In this document: positions 31,986-39,459 of the stretch, in pieces
Position numbering within the stretch: position 1 is the stretch's first letter
Layout of the letters: every line of letters begins with the position of its first letter
NCBI RefSeq assembly: GCF_032062105.1
Contig: NW_026920697.1
Span: forward strand, 62,001-126,000
From: Saccostrea cucullata
Taxonomy: Eukaryota
Length of the DNA: 64,000 bases
Direction: 5' to 3'
The notes under the pieces: generated by a model
What the model was told of the DNA's origin: nothing
Databases searched by the model: none
What the model saw: the letters and a program-made list of their open reading frames with translations, nothing else
Position numbers and translations under genes: made by a program

Positions 31986-33116
31986 ATGAAGGAACATATT
32001 TTTGCGCTTTGTATGATCTATTCGGCTTTAATCACATTGGCTGATTTTAGGAAGAGTGAAAATCATGGAACATTTAGCTGGCTTCATTCTATTCCACGAG
32101 ATGACCCACGAGTTCAAGACGTCATCATGAATCCAATGAGGGAGAAACTGAGAATTGTAGGACCGTTCCTAGCCGCTCATAAGTATTTCGCAGTAGATCC
32201 ACGATCCATAAACGGACGTGTCGAAAGAAAAGGCGGATTACATAGAAGTTTTCCTAACCCAAGAATAGTACAGTGGGACCCTAGTATTACCAAGGCTTGC
32301 GAGGATGGTGAAGTGTCTTGTATAAACGAAATCTACAGGAAAGCCATCATGGCGAATTCTGTATGGAAACTTCACGATTCCGATAAATACTCTAAACATT
32401 CAATATTCTCGCCATTCAAAACCGAATTGGAGATGTTTCGATATCGGGCCACAGCAGTTTATTACATGTGTTGGTATACAGAACTGAAATGTGCATTGTT
32501 AGCGTATGTTGAAAACCACGAAAAGGGGTGTCTGGATTCTTTGTCAAACACTGTTGAAGCAAATGGTAGACACATTGTTGATTTTAGATCCGACTATGGC
32601 GGAAATCAGTCAGATCCTATTTCCCTGTGGACCTGTGCCTATTTATGGTTTTGTCCAGACCCCTGTTACGGAAGAAGTTCAAATGGAAATGTGAAAGACG
32701 AAACATCGGCCAAAGCTGACCCACAAAACCCTTGCACCAAACTAAAGGACAAAACCTGTACGTGGATTACTGGGAAAAACATTGACTTCCAAGATCTGAC
32801 CAAAAACAGGTTTAATTATTCCTGTGTCTGTGATAAGCAGGGCTATATATGGAGCCCTAGGTACCGACTTTGCTTTGACCAGGACGAGTGCTTTGACCAA
32901 GTGGCACAATGTCCCGACGATAAAATCTGCAGGAATACCATTGGTTCCTATGATTGTAGTTGCAGGCGGGGATTCTTTCAACACGAGATGACTGGGAATT
33001 GTGTTCGTAGTCCTATTTTTAAGGGATCACTTGACAGAATTCGCCAAAGAGCAAAGAAGAAGGATAAAAATGTACCATTTTGGATCAAAATAATGGAAAA
33101 AATACTTGGGAAATAA
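31986..33116 (+). CDS. Secreted Cys-rich protein with a C-terminal calcium-binding EGF-like domain (single coding exon)
   Basis: Signal-peptide-like MKEHIFALCMIYSALITLA; DQDECFDQVAQCPDDKICRNTIGSYDCSCRRGF fits the EGF_CA pattern. Confidence 0.88.
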   Translation: MKEHIFALCMIYSALITLADFRKSENHGTFSWLHSIPRDDPRVQDVIMNPMREKLRIVGPFLAAHKYFAVDPRSINGRVERKGGLHRSFPNPRIVQWDPSITKACEDGEVSCINEIYRKAIMANSVWKLHDSDKYSKHSIFSPFKTELEMFRYRATAVYYMCWYTELKCALLAYVENHEKGCLDSLSNTVEANGRHIVDFRSDYGGNQSDPISLWTCAYLWFCPDPCYGRSSNGNVKDETSAKADPQNPCTKLKDKTCTWITGKNIDFQDLTKNRFNYSCVCDKQGYIWSPRYRLCFDQDECFDQVAQCPDDKICRNTIGSYDCSCRRGFFQHEMTGNCVRSPIFKGSLDRIRQRAKKKDKNVPFWIKIMEKILGK

Positions 33117-34203
33117 CATTGTATTTACCTTAAATAGAACATGTTGAAGCAAAAAGTTATTTTTATAATTCATAATACCGAATGTATGCAACTTTAGTTT
33201 ATATTTTTATAAAACAATCATGAATCATTTTCCAAAGGCTCACAGATTATACAATGTAAATTTATTTTGTGCTTATCTGTTATTTTCCTATACATTGCAT
33301 AACGACCACTAAACTTTCTAAAAGGTAACGTTACCTTGACTGGTGTGCAATTGTGTATTCAGCAGCTGTAAACATTTTTAATTACATTTTGCCTGAAAAA
33401 ATATATATTCTATGCCTTACAGCCAGGAACAATGGTCATTAATTAAATTGAAAATAATGAAAGAATTGTTGAAAAAAGGTTAGATTTGTAAACCTATCAG
33501 TTTATTTACAATTGCGAAATGTAACCACTATATACAATGTATGGTATTTTATAAAGTGACAACTCCAACCTGTCACTCAGTTGATGTTTTATGCACGGAC
33601 CATATATAGTTCTGCTTTAGTCCTAGGAATTAATTATCATATTTTGCAATTCATAAAGTGCATAATGTTCAAAATTAAGAAAACTTTTGCATTTGAACAA
33701 AAATGTGATGTGAAAAATCCAACAACATTCATATCAGCATGTAGATTTAATTTAAAAAAGAGAAAAAAGTTTGAAATTGTTCTAGTGTCATGTCTTTATG
33801 TACAAATACAATGTAGGTTTCATGATGTAGTGTGTACAGTTTGCTTCGTGTTTTTGTGCCATTACTTATAATGACCCCGTGTGATTAGATACAACCACAG
33901 CATATATATTAACAATTTCCATAGAAAAAAGGAGTAATTCATCGTGTAATGCTTCTCTCAATATAAATACGGCCAGCGCGTGAATTTTAAATAGGTAAAA
34001 CTAATTTTGACGTTGAATATGTTTACTGGATATAATGTTAATTCTTAATGCCCACGTCAGACATAAAGAATATATTTTTGCTTCACGTATTTTCTATGCA
34101 AATAAATCATGTGTACACCAATTAATTACTTTGAGTGATTAAGACTTCTCTGCAAAACATGCTTCACTAATGCGAGTCAGGACAATTTTTGGTTCGAGAT
34201 CTG

Positions 34204-37200
34204 ATGATGCGCGCACTGGTTCTTCTAAGTTTACACCTACTGACAGACATCTGGGGATGGCCCTCCTTTAACGACTACATACCAAACGGTGACAAGGTCC
34301 CCAATCCGTGCAACCCCTCCCTAATATGGTACGGGGTGGGGCACCTTGGTGCCCATGGATCAGGACCTAGAAATCAATTTGGAAAAGATTTTCTGAAAGC
34401 CAATAAGGTAAGTTGATTTGAAGTTTTCCTTCGTATAAATAGGTAACAATGAGTACTTTCGTTTGATCTGTACACACTAAGCGCTAGAAGACCCTGGAAG
34501 TAAGGTGACATTGTGGTCAGTATGGACAGGTCATTTACCTATAAGTCATACCTTTATTTACACTTGTGTCCCATGCCCAGTAATTAGTGACTTGATATAC
34601 ACAGCTGACTAAATCTGACCAGTCCATGACAATTGAGTAGCGCATGATTTTATGCATCATTTCCAAAATTAAGACGATAAACATATCTTCACTTGTCTTT
34701 TACCAAAAAGAATAAAATCTGCAATAAACTGGTTTGCATCGTTTGTCACTGATATGTGATTTTTTTTCTCTTCAGAACCAAGCCATAGTAACCAAAGTAT
34801 TTTAAAGTTCAATAATGAATAATAGGATATTTACAGTTACAAATTCATATTTCACATTGTAGGAACATTATATCCACTGTGTACTCATTACTTTCTCTCT
34901 CTCTCACTCTCATTTTTTTTTAAATCCTGGACCCTACCTATTTCATCACACCTGAACTGACAACTCAAGTGAACTTTTCTGATCACCCATTCTCTGTCGT
35001 CCGTCCGTCTGTAAACTTTTCACATTTTCAACTTCTCCTCAAGAACCACTGGACCAATTTTAACCAAACTTGGTACAAAGCATCCCTGGGTGAAGGAGAG
35101 TTTAAATTTTTTAATAAAGCACCAAGCCCTCAGGTACCTGTGGACAGGACCCTCACCCCCCATACCCAACATATTCAAAAACCGGGACTTGTTGGACATT
35201 TTTTTCGCAAATTATATGTACTCGTATTACACTTAATTATCATGTTTACAATAGGGAAAAAATTGTAAAAACCTCAAAATAATCGCTCCACAAAAAAAAC
35301 CCCTCCACTCCACAGTATAGTGGAGTATTTTTTGTGGAGCGATTATTTTGGGGGTTTTACGATTTTTCCTCTTGTACACATGATGAATACGTGTAATAAA
35401 TATAATTTGTGAAAAGAAATTGTCCAACAAGCTCCGGGGTTCCTGGGGCCAGGGGTAGAACCAATGGACCAGGAAAGCTGATATTTATGTGAAAGCATCC
35501 TGGGGCCAGGGGTAGTGTAGATTCTAAATTGTTCAAACATGACCCAAGGGGGAAAAGCGAGGCGACAATAGGGAATCCAAGTTTTTAATTGAAATATACA
35601 GGAAAAATCTTCTTCTCAAGAAACACAAGGCCAGGAAGGCTGAAACTTATGTGGAAGCATTATAAGGGAGGGGGTTGGTCTGGTGAAAAACGGCATGGCT
35701 AATGTATTCAGCCATCAGGTGAGCGTTGTGGCCCATGGGCCTTTTTGGTATAGTAGAACGAATTACTATAGTATAACATGTGCAATAGTTATTCATATGT
35801 TCAAATCCAACTTAATACCAATAAAGAGAGACTGGTTCTTTGGTTTCCCTCCAGAAATGGGAGGACATTTGTCGTCTGGATTCGGACGGGGACGGTCAGT
35901 ACAATGGGCTGGAGCTAGGGGACCCAAACTGTGAGTGGTCCACCACCAACAGGAACCTGACCCTCCCGGCCTTTTCACATCCAGGTAAGGCACGGGGATA
36001 TATTGGAAGTTAAACTGTTGTATTCAATATCTTAAAATTAAAGGAAAGTTTTAATGGTGGGTGGGAATATGTGCCGAAATGTGTTCTCCTATTCTCCACC
36101 CAAAGTTGTCCCGCTTGGCTCCCAACACCTCAGGTGTCTGTGGGAGCGTATTGGAACGGCATACAGAATAATCTCTTGCTCGCTTTGTTTCTTAGATTTT
36201 ATGCTTTCCTCATTTTTAATAACATTTAGATTCAAAATCCTCTAGGTATTTCAACTTAATCGAAGAATTCAAAGGTTTCATTTTTTGCCTAATATGATAC
36301 ACTGGAAGAAAATGGCCATGATTCATAAAACCGACAGACAGCGTAGGTTTGAAAAAAGTGTATTTTTGGATTAACATTCTGAGCGCCATTTGTGTTTAGC
36401 ATATTTGCTAATTTCTGAAAGTTGTCTGAAGATATATTTCACACTGAATGCAAAATCAAATGCAGGAACAATTTCATTACTAGTATATCCTTAGTCTCCC
36501 TCTTCTATACCTGATTTATACAATATTCCAACCTTTGAAAGTGTATTTCAATTTTGTCATAATTTTGCAAACCTTTTGGCAAACAATCTCGAAATCCATT
36601 TCTTTGGCGTAACAGATGTGGAAAATCAGCATCTGTACTTATTTTAAAATAGCATATCTGCATGTAAAATAACACCAGTAGGATTTCCTTAACAATACCA
36701 TCTCTTTACTAATTTGATATTAGGTATCTGTGAACCCTGGGACAGCCCGAGATGTCTTGCTATGAATGGCTCTTTGGACTGCGATGCCGACAAAGTCTCC
36801 ACTAAATGTGAACAAATTGATGAACCAGGTCATTAGAGGATTTTATTTTTTATTGCAATTTTGGCATTATTTTACACAATTTGACATACTGAATATAATT
36901 AAATAACTTTTTATTTCCCCATTTCATTGTAGGTGTAAAGAAGTATGACATGTTCCTTAACAACTATTCCATTCCATTAAAAGAGTGGAGCTTTGTTTGC
37001 CGAATATTCAATTTGCCGACGAATAAAGACTATCACGTGATAGCATCTAAACCAATCAACCACCAGCATAAACTTCTGAAAAAAGTAGCAGTCTATGGAT
37101 GCAGTTAGTATCAATGTATTCTTGGATTGTACATGAGTGTATATTCATTTTTATTCATTAATTTTTTTTATTTTAGATTGAATATAAGACAGTATTTATA

Positions 37201-38815
37201 TATGTAACATTTTAGTCTAAGGATGTAGAGAACAATTTCAAATTTTCTAACAAGGAGCAGAAAAAAGGTCAAACATGAAAATCCATTTATAGGGGGGTAG
37301 GATATATTTTTTTTGAGGGGGGGGGGTAAATTTTCCCTATAGACCAGGCAAGCACTCATTTCATTTTACTACTCATTTAACTCATGAAGATTGAAATGCC
37401 GTTATCATGATTGTAGATCCAAACATGGAACGGATTACACGACTGGGGGTTTTTGAATGCTCCTCGATAATCGCCAAACCTTGTCAAGATCTCATTGCAA
37501 TAATGACCACCGACCAAATGGACCAGGGCAACTGTTTTCCACGTGACGTGGGGCTACAGATTGGCAAAACAGGATACAAGCAAATTCTTATGAAGGTTCG
37601 TACATCTCATTTGTTAGTGAACTTTTCATTCGAGTTGTTCCGATATAACAATATACTATTCTTTACAGTGGACATTTGTCAATCCAAGGAAAGAACAATC
37701 CGTGACACAGGCGGGAATGTCACTGTTCATCACCCCAAATCTGAAGAAATATAACGCCGGGGTGGCCATTCTGGAGGAGACGCACTTCAGCGTGCCGGGA
37801 AACCTCCCTAGTTACTCGGTGTCGTCTGCTTGTCCTAGTTCCTGTACACAGCTCCAAATGAGATCACCAGTTACCATCGTGGCGGGAGTTAACGTCATGA
37901 GGCATTATGGTAATTATAGCTATAACTACCTCCTTGTTAACACCATCTTTCCCGGAAGTCAACGGTTTCTGATCCACTCCTCTCTGCATTAATGCGGAGC
38001 AGAATAGGTCAGAAAGTTTCGACTTGGGAAGATGGAATATCATGCTATTTAGTAAAATTGATCACTGGAGAATTGATTCAAATTGACTGTAAAGATAGTT
38101 TGAATCCCTTGTAGGTGTTAAACAGCGAGTGGATGTTGAAAGAAATGACAGGATCTACAACTCTATTACAAATGACACTAGCTATGACGTTTTCGACCCA
38201 ACTGTTTTCTGGTATAGTGTTATTCAAAATAATGTCTATGCATTGCACAGAGACCTCAGAGTTAAATTGTTCTAATAAGCAAAATAATTTTTTTTTACAT
38301 ATACTAGGTACACAACCCCTGTGCCAGTCCTTCCCGGTGATATGTTGAAGCTGACTTGTGAGTACAACACAATGAATGTGCGCAGTGATGTTAACTGGGG
38401 AATGGGGCCAAATCAGGAGCTGTGTAAAACCATCCTCATCTTTTACCCAAAGGAAAACTGGGACGACCATCACTGTGAAAGCTTTAAAAATATCCCCCTT
38501 TGTGCCTTGGAGATCGGTGATTCTGTGTTTGGGTGTACCTACGGTGGATTTATGACGGCCTTAAATTCAAATCCTCTCTACGACCTCACAAAATGTTCAA
38601 TTTTGTCCACATGTACAGACGAATGCCTGCAACGCGTAACGGCTGTCCGAGGGACGCCTTGTCTCTCAGGAGATATGTACGAATTGTGGAAACTCATGGC
38701 GAGGTCACTGAGAAATAACAAATTAATTACTTTGTTTAAAGCACTTGTAACCTGCGAGGAAAGATATACCACCACTTTGTTAGGAACAAGGTCTCAAAGC
38801 CATGGTAGAGGATAG
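34204..38815 (+). CDS. Temptin domain plus copper type II ascorbate-dependent monooxygenase fold (DBH/MOXD1-like), probably catalytically dead. Exons 34204-34407, 35855-35984, 36724-36828, 36933-37103, 37417-37595, 37669-37909, 38115-38211, 38308-38815
   Basis: Signal peptide; IPNGDKVPNPC...GVGH...GPRNQFGKDF; ICRLDSDGDGQYNGLELGDPNCEW...SHPG (temptin); FNLPTNKDYHVIA, FPRDVGLQIG, TPNLKKYNAG, VLPGDMLKLTCEYNT, ELC...FYP. Confidence 0.9.
34945..35748 (+). mobile_element. HINE-like element in intron 1 of the temptin gene, interrupted by a nested palindromic repeat (~35130-35435)
   Basis: CACCTGAACTGACAACTCAAGTGAACTTTTCTGATCA...GTCCGTCCGTCTGTAAAC start; one satellite monomer like that of 1-1100; CAGGTGAGCGTTGTGGCCCATGGGCCT end. 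Confidence 0.75.
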
Positions 38816-39459
38816 CATTTAAACCTATGCTACCCGTAATCAAATATAGTATATCCTCACTAAGGCTATTCAAAGACTGACAGGAAATTGTATGTTTGTT
38901 TGTTAACTTTATATTAACATGTTACCCCATGCCATATTTTTTTAATGTGAAATGAAGTGTTTCATTGCATTTATGTTTTAAGTGTGCATTACAAAGAATT
39001 TGATTTTTCACCTAACCAGCTTCTTTGACAATTTAACCAAACATCTCTGAAGAGACTGTAACTCTCCTGGTTCTTACTTAGTAAGCAAAGGTAGAGAAAA
39101 GGTGCACTTTGAATTGAACCTATGGCAACAGCAATACATTAAAAAAGTGGAAAACTGTCACTATGACAGCAATCCAGAGGCCTGTTCAACAGTGAGAATA
39201 TTTGCAAACTCTTGCCAAAATTCCTAATACCTCCAACAAAGGTGTTTGCAAGCACTTGCTCTGTTGAACTGGGCCCTGGTTTTGGTTTTCATTGTGTGAA
39301 CAATTTAATTATACACTATCCAAGAAAATCTATTTTAAATGTAGTAGAATGAAAAGTGTGTAGGTTGTCCCAAGATTGGCTCTAGATGGAAAATAACTCT
39401 TGTAAATATGGACATTGTATATTAAAAAAAAAATATATCCTAAAAATTCACTGGTTTGA

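What the first reader, a model, noticed from the sequence alone, without database searches (positions are those of the whole stretch)
34204..38815. Temptin-monooxygenase fusion that has lost all six copper ligands: a secreted pseudoenzyme
Known: DBH/PHM-family enzymes use HH plus H for CuH, and HxH plus Met for CuM. Seen at the equivalent positions: LLKKVAVYGC (HH to KK), ILMKWTFVNP (H to T), GVNVMRHYG (HxH to VxR) and NQELC (EMC to ELC). All 8 exons, splice sites and structural cysteines remain intact, and the temptin domain (temptin is an Aplysia water-borne pheromone protein) is well preserved. Inference: a selected non-catalytic monooxygenase fold that may serve as a ligand carrier, chemical cue, shell-matrix protein or inhibitory subunit for active paralogues.
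Basis: partly seen in the sequence, partly recalled or inferred. Interest (0 to 1): 0.75.

Follow-up and report, generated by a model that had tools for sequence, protein, structure and literature searches.

The report
Copper-less oyster temptin–monooxygenase pseudoenzyme
This hooded-oyster gene encodes a secreted protein that keeps the full fold of a copper-dependent hydroxylase but has replaced all six copper-binding residues, is transcribed and conserved, and belongs to a bivalve branch of such "dead" enzymes that includes a known pearl-oyster shell protein.

Summary
Window 34204-38815 (+) is an 8-exon gene with canonical splice sites. Its product is the NCBI record "MOXD1 homolog 1-like [Saccostrea cucullata]" (P0151, 544 aa): Temptin_C + Cu2_monooxygen + Cu2_monoox_C.

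In the family alignment the six copper-ligand columns (H,H / H / HxH / M; 92-100% kept in 36 intact relatives) read K196, K197, T265, V339, R341, L414. All 24 conserved Cys columns are kept, as are 41 of 42 conserved columns in residues 1-140 (temptin domain and linker). The AlphaFold2 model (pLDDT 90) matches DBH and PHM (Z 28-30).

The gene is not decaying:
- Contigs of 4 runs (4 studies; one on record as RNA) skip all 7 introns exactly as modelled.
- Of 37 listed coding differences to a ~6%-diverged relative, 33 are synonymous.
- 0-of-6 orthologues exist in another unnamed source (79% identity) and in Pinctada (47%).

It is not a one-off. A 10-row clade (SH-aLRT 100; the 8 named rows are pteriomorph bivalves) has no intact member. 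Ligands were lost in different combinations. The clade contains PU1, a Pinctada fucata prismatic-layer shell-matrix protein. This genome holds about ten intact fusion loci and one PU1-like locus.

Function is inferred: a non-catalytic extracellular scaffold or binding protein, with shell or mantle matrix the best lead. I found no printed report of the ligand loss. I rate it a new variant of a known kind, of moderate interest.

The parts
34100..34203 (+). 5' UTR (at least this far)
   Evidence: The X10 contig of 1938 nt lies on 34100-34405, starting at the first base of the laid stretch (table 8).
34204..34407 (+). Exon 1: start codon, hydrophobic N-terminus (putative signal peptide), first half of Temptin_C including the GVGH motif (H47 at 34342-34344)
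   Evidence: The junction 34407/35855 is seen in 4 of 4 runs.
35855..35984 (+). Exon 2: second half of Temptin_C with the DSDGDG motif (35879-35896)
   Evidence: junctions.
36724..36828 (+). Exon 3: Cys-rich linker between the temptin and monooxygenase domains
   Evidence: C114, C122, C131, C140 conserved; junctions.
36933..37103 (+). Exon 4: start of the Cu2_monooxygen (CuH) domain. K196 K197 (37079-37084) stand where the family has H-H.
37417..37595 (+). Exon 5: middle of the CuH domain
   Evidence: weak Pfam hit; junctions.
37669..37909 (+). Exon 6: end of the CuH domain and start of the CuM domain. T265 (37672-37674) replaces H. V339-M340-R341 (37894-37902) stand where the family has H-M-H.
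38115..38211 (+). Exon 7: CuM domain strands
   Evidence: junctions 37909/38115 and 38211/38308.
38308..38815 (+). Exon 8: end of Cu2_monoox_C, with L414 (38420-38422) in place of the CuM Met. Then a Cys-rich helical C-terminal domain and the stop codon (38813-38815).
38816..38893 (+). 3' UTR (at least this far)
   Evidence: The X10 contig piece lies on 38307-38893 (table 8).

Best explanation
The locus is a functional, transcribed gene for a protein that is probably secreted, disulfide-rich and glycosylated. It descends from the lophotrochozoan temptin-DBH-like fusion family (Temptin_C + PHM/DBH catalytic core + a Cys-rich helical tail).

The protein keeps the two-sandwich PHM fold but has neither copper site: CuH H,H,H is now K,K,T and CuM H,H,M is now V,R,L. 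It therefore cannot work as an ascorbate-dependent copper monooxygenase (inferred).

It belongs to a clade, pteriomorph bivalves where the sources name the species, in which constraint on copper binding was relaxed early and ligands were then lost independently in different combinations. The oyster/Pinctada branch is the end point, with 0 of 6 ligands.

What selection still maintains is the scaffold: the temptin DSDGDG module, all cysteines and the C-terminal domain. The most likely job is therefore extracellular binding or structure, not chemistry. Because the sister subclade contains PU1, a prismatic-layer shell-matrix protein, I rank the roles as follows, all as inference:
- a mantle-secreted matrix or shell-associated role, about 0.3-0.35;
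- a soluble carrier or cue role, about 0.15;
- a partner of active paralogues, about 0.1.
For: Shown:
- Gene model and its identity to P0151.
- Three Pfam domains over their cut-offs.
- Model pLDDT 90.3.
- Foldseek: DBH E 7.5e-24, PHM about 1e-21, TM 0.8 on PHM.
- VIA-align: Z 28-30, about 280 residues at 2.7-3.0 A.
- Six ligand columns replaced while 24 of 24 Cys columns are kept.
- Only two His (H181, H302) are identical among the three 0-of-6 orthologues in the core.
- PDB entry titles report that single-ligand PHM mutants lose CuH (H107A and H172A entries).
- All 7 introns are skipped at the modelled sites in 4 of 4 runs from 4 studies, and one 1938-nt contig from a run on record as RNA spans the mRNA.
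- 33 synonymous against 4 non-synonymous among 37 listed coding differences, with 352 synonymous and 1265 non-synonymous sites; crude dN/dS about 0.03, binomial P 4e-18.
- Orthologues: P0152 at 79% (GQTIGL) and Pinctada P0003 at 47% (GGIINV).
- A 10-row clade with SH-aLRT 100 has 0 of 10 intact members, against 52 of 60 intact outside it.
- P0013 is PU1: its computed pI 9.49 and 53.6 kDa match the paper's table, where it is listed as prismatic layer, Cu2_monooxygen.
Against: - No copper-binding, activity, tissue or proteome data exist for this protein.
- The synonymous/non-synonymous count uses only the 40 of 117 difference rows that the tool printed.
- Contigs cannot show expression level, and three of the four runs are only guessed to be RNA.
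- I could not read model coordinates, so a new metal site built from clade-specific residues (H302, M388, E299, E300) is not excluded.
- PU1 lies in the sister subclade, not the same one, and it keeps H-M-H.
- Shell proteomes also contain apparently ordinary temptin/TBH-like proteins (Haliotis), so presence in shell does not require ligand loss.
- No named Crassostrea, Magallana or Ostrea orthologue surfaced. That search is word-limited, so the blank says little.
Confidence: 0.8

Rival explanations
1. The protein is still an oxidoreductase. It binds copper or another metal or cofactor through residues other than the canonical six, for example the clade-specific H302, M388, E299 and E300, or H342 next to the lost HxH.
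For: Strong purifying selection. 58 positions are identical in the three 0-of-6 orthologues yet rare in intact relatives, including the E-E-T-H motif at 299-302 and M388. HMMER could place M340-R341-H342 on H-T-H with one gap.
Against: M340 is the invariant middle residue of H-M-H in 45 of 45 rows, so the gapped register is wrong. H342 is absent in Pinctada P0003. The ligand columns themselves drift among orthologues (K/G/G, K/Q/G, T/T/I, V/I/I, R/G/N, L/L/V), which is not what a rebuilt site would show. Only two His are shared in the core.
Confidence: 0.07
2. The locus is a decaying pseudogene, or an annotation artefact, that merely resembles a monooxygenase gene.
For: All catalytic ligands are gone. 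19 of 47 conserved core columns have changed.
Against: The 544-codon frame is open and all splice sites are canonical. Spliced contigs are found in 4 of 4 runs. The listed differences split 33 synonymous to 4 non-synonymous. All 24 Cys columns are kept. Orthologues exist at 79% and 47% identity with the same architecture.
Confidence: 0.02
3. The protein is a non-catalytic partner that pairs with the roughly ten intact temptin-monooxygenase paralogues through the shared C-terminal helical domain, and regulates or inhibits them.
For: About ten intact fusion loci sit in the same genome. The C-terminal domain is fully conserved (8 of 8 conserved columns). DBH is known to oligomerise (recalled, not from a call).
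Against: There is no evidence of co-expression or interaction. The C-terminal domain was not matched to the DBH dimerisation domain: the VIA alignment covers model residues 19-449 only. The nearest paralogue shares only 38% identity in the last exon.
Confidence: 0.1
4. The protein is a water-borne cue or ligand carrier. The temptin module acts as in Aplysia or Biomphalaria pheromone complexes, and the dead enzyme pocket carries a small molecule.
For: The conserved columns of residues 1-140, which hold the temptin signature, are kept almost entirely (41 of 42). Temptin is an attractant in Aplysia and Biomphalaria (passages of PMC10075465).
Against: The same temptin module sits on all intact enzymes of the family, so it is not diagnostic of pheromone function. 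Oysters are sessile broadcast spawners (general knowledge). No secretion or behavioural data exist.
Confidence: 0.15

Closest known systems
Human dopamine beta-hydroxylase (PDB 4zel) and rat peptidylglycine alpha-hydroxylating monooxygenase (PDB 1phm and others)
   Same: The two-domain beta-sandwich catalytic core matches. Sequence E is 3.7e-16, Foldseek E is 1e-21 to 1e-24, and VIA Z is 28-30 over about 280-375 residues. Both Pfam domains are found.
   Different: None of the six copper ligands is present. Pfam finds no DOMON domain; a temptin domain sits N-terminal instead. The Cys-rich helical tail was not aligned to DBH.
PU1 of Pinctada fucata (AKV63176.1; prismatic-layer shell-matrix protein with a Cu2_monooxygen domain, Liu et al. 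2015, PMC4660305)
   Same: It lies in the same 10-row degenerate clade, has the same architecture in its full-length relative P0186, and also lacks the CuH ligands and the CuM Met (GGRHHI).
   Different: It is in the sister subclade, shares only about 36% identity, keeps H-M-H, and is basic (pI 9.49 against 6.9). PU1 was found in shell by mass spectrometry; this protein has no such data.
Intact temptin-DBH-like fusions, for example Mya arenaria 'dopamine beta-hydroxylase-like' (P0020), Aplysia 'dopamine beta hydroxylase-like protein precursor' (P0156), and about ten loci in this genome
   Same: The three-domain architecture, cysteine framework, temptin signature and C-terminal domain are the same.
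   Different: They keep HH/H/HxH/M. Identity is 25-32%.
Aplysia temptin (stand-alone water-borne pheromone protein)
   Same: The Temptin_C domain with the DSDGDG motif scores 112 bits against a cut-off of 27.
   Different: Here the domain is the N-terminal module of a 544-aa protein. Pheromone activity was not tested.
MOXD1 (the name NCBI's pipeline gave the gene)
   Same: It is a homologous catalytic core of unknown physiological role.
   Different: MOXD1 has a DOMON domain and intact ligands (recalled). This protein has neither, so the name misleads.

Membership tests
[quoted passage not shown] | Homologous two-domain beta-sandwich core (Pfam PF01082 + PF03712) | tested here: met
   47.6 and 48.1 bits, both over the cut-offs. 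Foldseek and VIA matches to DBH and PHM.
[quoted passage not shown] | CuH site: H-H plus a third His | tested here: not met
   K196, K197 and T265 stand at columns that are H in 100%, 100% and 92% of 36 intact relatives.
[quoted passage not shown] | CuM site: H-x-H plus Met | tested here: not met
   V339, R341 and L414 stand at columns that are H, H and M in 100% of 36 intact relatives. The register is fixed by the invariant M340.
[quoted passage not shown] | Copper binding and hydroxylase activity | not testable with these tools
   This needs purified protein.
Temptin (Pfam Temptin_C, PF24784) | Domain match with the conserved Cys, GVGH and DSDGDG motifs | tested here: met
   112.1 bits against a cut-off of 27. 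41 of 42 conserved columns in residues 1-140 are kept.
Lophotrochozoan temptin-DBH-like fusion family | Temptin_C + Cu2_monooxygen + Cu2_monoox_C + Cys-rich C-terminal domain in one chain | tested here: met
   The relatives carry the same three Pfam domains.
Degenerate bivalve clade (contains PU1) | Placement inside the clade on a family tree | tested here: met
   The 10-row clade has SH-aLRT 100 and the subclade of 5 has 99 (quick search, no bootstrap). The 49-row tree gave a 9-row clade at 99.
Shell-matrix proteins | Peptides recovered from shell; mantle expression | not tested
   No Saccostrea shell proteome or tissue-labelled run was available. The only support is the relative PU1.
MOXD1 / DBH proper | N-terminal DOMON domain | tested here: not met
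   No DOMON hit at E <= 0.01 on P0151.

The most novel reading that the evidence does not exclude
The whole degenerate bivalve clade records an enzyme-to-matrix co-option. After a duplication of a temptin-monooxygenase, copper chemistry became dispensable. The calcium-binding temptin module plus the rigid disulfide-locked PHM scaffold was then kept as an extracellular structural or binding protein of mantle secretions and shell, as PU1 is in Pinctada prisms. The ligands decayed independently in each lineage (HHLQHI, HGQHHM, DQRHHM, GGRHHI, SAHQNL, QQRHHI, GGIINV, GQTIGL, KKTVRL). This gives a natural series of stepwise active-site erosion, ending in the oyster protein with 0 of 6.
Probability: 0.3. 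Interest if true: 0.65.

Novelty: new variant of a known kind. Interest (0 to 1): 0.5.

Why it matters
PHM/DBH-type enzymes are textbook two-copper catalysts, and I know of no described branch that keeps the fold with both sites erased. This statement rests on my searches below and on recall.

Here such a branch is expressed, under purifying selection and shared by several bivalve orders. One member has already been pulled out of shell prisms without anyone remarking that it cannot bind CuH.

There are three practical consequences:
- Automatic names such as 'MOXD1 homolog', 'dopamine beta-hydroxylase-like' and 'tyramine beta-hydroxylase-like' mislead studies of bivalve monoamine synthesis.
- The clade offers a graded natural series for asking what a PHM scaffold does without copper.
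- It gives biomineralisation work a concrete candidate family, with one copy fully dead and one half dead in the same oyster genome.

Tried and rejected
- **Exon-piece searches.** Pieces of 31-80 aa (exons 3, 6, 7) gave no Pfam family. The full-length database record was needed.
- **First paper search.** 'temptin' as a word start matched 'tempting' and was useless. I repeated it with whole words.
- **HMMER's gapped placement** of M-R-H on H-T-H was rejected, because M340 is the invariant middle Met of the family.
- **Clustering near lost ligands.** I asked whether clade-specific conserved residues cluster next to the lost ligands. Reading one search's list by eye, only about 4 of 58 lie within 3 residues of a ligand. 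I saw no enrichment and make no claim.
- **C-terminal domain.** I tried to see whether the C-terminal helical domain matches the DBH dimerisation domain. The VIA alignment to 4zel_A spans model residues 19-449 only, so this stays undecided.
- **Model coordinates.** They are not available to scripts. The test 'which side chains surround the former copper positions' could not be run.
- **Peng et al. 2021** (temptin and the prismatic layer) is not held. I know it only from reference lists and one sentence in PMC10075465.
- **Accession searches** in paper texts found nothing. Supplementary tables are closed. Table S4 of PMC4660305 and the supplements of PMC11464482 and PMC6003135 may hold expression or identity data on PU1-, DBH-like- and temptin-type shell proteins that I could not see.
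- **No printed mention of ligand loss in these proteins.** This rests on searches, and on passages only of the papers opened.
- **Named oyster orthologues.** No named Crassostrea, Magallana or Ostrea orthologue appeared. That search is word-limited, so this is not evidence of absence.
- **Rows left out of the trees:**
  - all hits under 430 aa;
  - P0013 (a fragment; its full-length cluster-mate P0186 was used instead);
  - about 25 further 430-800-aa hits whose ligand strings are listed;
  - P0187, P0172 and P0127, which were in the 49-row tree but not the 70-row tree.
Full report
**Anatomy**

The stretch 34204-38815 carries an eight-exon gene on the + strand. Every intron begins GT and ends AG, and the exons add up to 1635 nt, 544 codons plus stop. 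Window sequence went to the search tools exon by exon.

Pfam recognised Temptin_C in exons 1 and 2, Cu2_monooxygen in exon 4 (and weakly, below the cut-off, in exon 5), and Cu2_monoox_C in exon 8. Exons 3, 6 and 7 were too short or divergent to score.

A search of 1.84 billion representatives with exon 8 alone led to full-length relatives. Through them it led to P0151, the NCBI record 'MOXD1 homolog 1-like [Saccostrea cucullata]', 544 aa. Each of the eight exon translations is identical to the corresponding part of P0151; that is 539 residues, and the other five are split codons.

On P0151 all three Pfam families exceed their curated cut-offs, and no DOMON domain is found.

The N-terminus is hydrophobic and is modelled as a helix of low confidence. 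There are four N-x-S/T sequons and 24 cysteines. I infer a secreted glycoprotein; no signal-peptide predictor was available.

**The copper sites**

HMMER aligns P0151 to human DBH (4zel_A, E 3.7e-16). K196-K197 fall on the H-H pair, T265 on the third CuH histidine, and L414 on the CuM methionine.

At the H-x-H motif HMMER opened a gap and put M340-R341-H342 on H-T-H. This register is wrong.

In the 36 relatives of that alignment that lie outside the degenerate groups, the six columns are H, H, H, H, H, M in 100, 100, 92, 100, 100 and 100% of rows.
- P0151 departs from the consensus at 20 of 97 strongly conserved columns, and all six ligand columns are among these (hypergeometric P 3.9e-5).
- The decay is local. 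41 of 42 conserved columns in residues 1-140 (temptin domain and linker), 8 of 8 in the C-terminal domain, and 24 of 24 cysteine columns are kept. Only 28 of 47 in the catalytic core are kept.
- Besides the ligands, ten further conserved core columns differ in P0151, P0152 and P0003 alike: T165, Y167, N191, M220, W233, W266, D276, S278, G299 and T410.

**Fold**

With the 45-row alignment, AlphaFold2 gives mean pLDDT 90.3 and pTM 0.73.
- Foldseek ranks human DBH first (E 7.5e-24), then about 25 PHM entries (E about 1e-21, TM about 0.8 on the PHM chain).
- VIA-align gives Z 29.8 for DBH and 28 for PHM, with about 280 residues at 2.7-3.0 A covering model residues 143-443. The next unrelated fold scores Z 8.

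So the scaffold is that of the enzyme. Several of the PDB entry titles state that single-ligand PHM mutants (H107A, H172A) lack CuH. This supports the inference that a protein lacking all six ligands binds no catalytic copper. I could not read the model's coordinates, so I could not check which side chains now line the former sites.

**Is it alive?**

One search found 16 public runs holding small shares of the gene's words. I laid four of them, one per study, on 34100-38900 at 85% likeness.

In 4 of 4 runs, contigs skip all seven introns at exactly the modelled GT..AG borders. In X10, which is on record as RNA-Seq, a single 1938-nt contig covers 34100-38893 minus the introns. The other three runs are only guessed to be RNA, and contigs say nothing about expression level.

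The contigs differ from the window by about 6%: 99 other letters in 1720 laid bases of the X10 contig, exon 7 not listed. They therefore come from a close relative or a divergent haplotype.

The tool printed 40 of 117 difference rows. 37 of these lie in whole codons of the CDS, and 33 are synonymous against 4 non-synonymous. With 352 synonymous and 1265 non-synonymous sites, that is a crude dN/dS of about 0.03 (binomial P 4e-18 against neutrality). The sample is partial but clear.

A second orthologue, P0152 (79% identity, 544 aa, from unnamed assemblies, 176 member sequences), reads GQTIGL at the six columns. Pinctada imbricata P0003 (47% identity) reads GGIINV. The ligand positions thus drift freely among orthologues while the frame, the cysteines and the architecture are held.

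**Family context**

The architecture Temptin_C + Cu2_monooxygen + Cu2_monoox_C is common in molluscs and is also found in a brachiopod hit. Most members are intact.

In a 70-row tree (IQ-TREE quick search, SH-aLRT only), 52 rows read HHHHHM. Ten of the 18 exceptions form one clade with support 100. Its eight named members are all pteriomorph bivalves: Saccostrea, Pinctada (two proteins), Mytilus (two), Mizuhopecten, Argopecten and Tegillarca. I checked the lineage only for Tegillarca and Mizuhopecten; the rest is recalled.

No member of the clade is intact, and the patterns differ:

| Member | Ligand columns |
|---|---|
| Mizuhopecten P0004 | HHLQHI |
| Mytilus P0153 | HGQHHM |
| Mytilus P0015 | DQRHHM |
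| Pinctada P0186 (PU1 cluster) | GGRHHI |
| P0212 (unnamed) | GGKHHI |
| Argopecten P0005 | QQRHHI |
| Tegillarca P0012 | SAHQNL |
| Pinctada P0003 | GGIINV |
| P0152 (unnamed) | GQTIGL |
| P0151 (this gene) | KKTVRL |

On the 49-row tree each ligand column needs 2-6 changes of state. The simplest reading, which is inference, is that constraint on copper binding was relaxed at the base of the clade and independent erosion followed. Outside the clade, eight scattered rows have lost one to five ligands (for example Lymnaea LHQRHV, Pecten HQQHHA, Sinanodonta NQHRHL). Ligand loss is therefore recurrent in this family.

**The link to shell**

P0013, in the sister subclade, is GenBank 'P-U1 [Pinctada fucata]'. 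Its computed pI 9.49 and 53.6 kDa equal the values printed for PU1 (prismatic layer only, domain Cu2_monooxygen) in the table of Liu et al. 2015 (PMC4660305; passages read; properties).

Other passages point the same way:
- A Pacific-oyster mantle study lists 'DBH-like' and 'Temptin-1/2' among putative shell-matrix genes (PMC11464482).
- A snail genome paper cites a role of temptin in freshwater-mussel biomineralisation (PMC10075465). The cited paper itself is not held.
- In contrast, a Mytilus larval study reports DBH-like paralogues in the larval gut, data not shown (bioRxiv 10.64898/2026.08.17.745212).

None of these passages mentions the missing ligands, and none concerns this gene.

**This genome**

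Six-frame searches found about a dozen fusion loci. I cut them out and aligned the intact Mya protein P0020 to them.
- L001, L002/L003, L005, L006, L007, L008/L009, L010, L011 and L012-L014 show HH, H, HxH and M.
- L004 and L016 are partial and show only intact ligands.
- Some pairs are probably haplotigs (L001/L004, L002/L005, L006/L007).
- L015 (C10009:44800-53500) reads GG, K, HH, I. It is the oyster's PU1-like gene and the nearest paralogue of the window gene (38% identity in the last exon).

The oyster therefore has many apparently active enzymes, one half-dead copy and one fully dead copy.

**Mechanism, with odds**

Shown: the fold, the architecture, the absence of all canonical ligands, transcription and splicing, purifying selection, and clade membership.

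Inferred: no copper binding and no hydroxylase activity (about 0.9); secretion (about 0.85).

The positive function is not shown. Given PU1 and the retained calcium-type DSDGDG motif, my estimates are:
- a mantle-secreted matrix or shell-associated binding protein, 0.3-0.35;
- a soluble carrier or cue, 0.15;
- a partner of active paralogues, 0.1;
- a residual or novel catalytic role, 0.07;
- a dying gene, 0.02.

A set of 58 positions is identical in the three 0-of-6 orthologues and rare elsewhere. It includes E299-E300-T301-H302 in place of G-Q-x-Y, and M388 in place of E. These mark where a new constraint acts and would be the first places to mutate.

**Novelty and verdict**

The gene is annotated, but under a misleading name. 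The fusion family is visible in databases. One relative is a published shell protein.

What I did not find in print is that a whole bivalve branch of PHM/DBH-fold proteins has lost its copper sites and is nevertheless conserved and expressed, with this oyster protein as the complete case. This rests on searches. Supplements are closed and subscription journals are mostly absent.

That makes it a new variant of a known kind (a pseudoenzyme branch of a known enzyme family), of moderate interest. The scan had not noted this gene before. A separate first-stage note (s1-731004) concerns stand-alone temptin genes elsewhere in the genome, and I did not test it.

Noticed in passing
window 31986-33116 (+): A single-exon ORF of 376 aa lies 1.1 kb upstream on the same strand and carries one calcium-binding EGF domain (EGF_CA, E 1.8e-8). 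It looks like another secreted Ca-binding protein next to the temptin-monooxygenase gene. It was already noted by the scan as s1-707326.
   Followed up: partly
window 34905-35870 (intron 1): This part of intron 1 attracts very large summed contig depth and many odd joints in all four runs, so it is a dispersed repeat or transposon-like element. Inside it is a 51-nt inverted repeat, 35253-35303 / 35322-35372, 86% complementary with an 18-nt loop.
   Followed up: partly
L015 (G000:C10009:44800-53500, minus strand): This is a second degenerate paralogue in the same genome, PU1-like. The ligand columns read GG, K, H-H, I, the same pattern as the unnamed protein P0212.
   Followed up: partly
P0005 (Argopecten irradians, 1159 aa) and P0012 (Tegillarca granosa, 719 aa): These members of the degenerate clade carry long Pro-, Gln- or Asn-rich low-complexity inserts between the temptin and monooxygenase domains. 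This composition is typical of shell-matrix proteins (recalled).
   Followed up: no
P0002 (134 aa, unnamed source): This protein differs from the last-exon region of P0152 almost only by P>F/L, T>I/M, A>V, H>Y, R>C/W and S>F. Translation of C-to-T converted (bisulfite-type) DNA would give that pattern. It is probably an assembly artefact, not a real protein.
   Followed up: no
P0230 (Lymnaea stagnalis), P0222 (Pecten maximus), P0032/P0053 (Sinanodonta woodiana): These are independent partial or heavy ligand losses outside the main degenerate clade (LHQRHV, HQQHHA, HHYYHI, NQHRHL). Pseudoenzyme formation is recurrent in this family.
   Followed up: partly
P0151 residues 440-541 (window exon 8, about 38500-38810): This Cys-rich, all-helical C-terminal domain is conserved across the whole fusion family (8 of 8 conserved columns kept). 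It was not covered by the matches to DBH or PHM, and its fold and role are unassigned.
   Followed up: no
G000:C21028:472000-487000: Three tandem stand-alone Temptin_C genes appear among the roughly 46 exon-level Temptin_C matches in this genome. This is perhaps the locus of the scan's note s1-731004.
   Followed up: no
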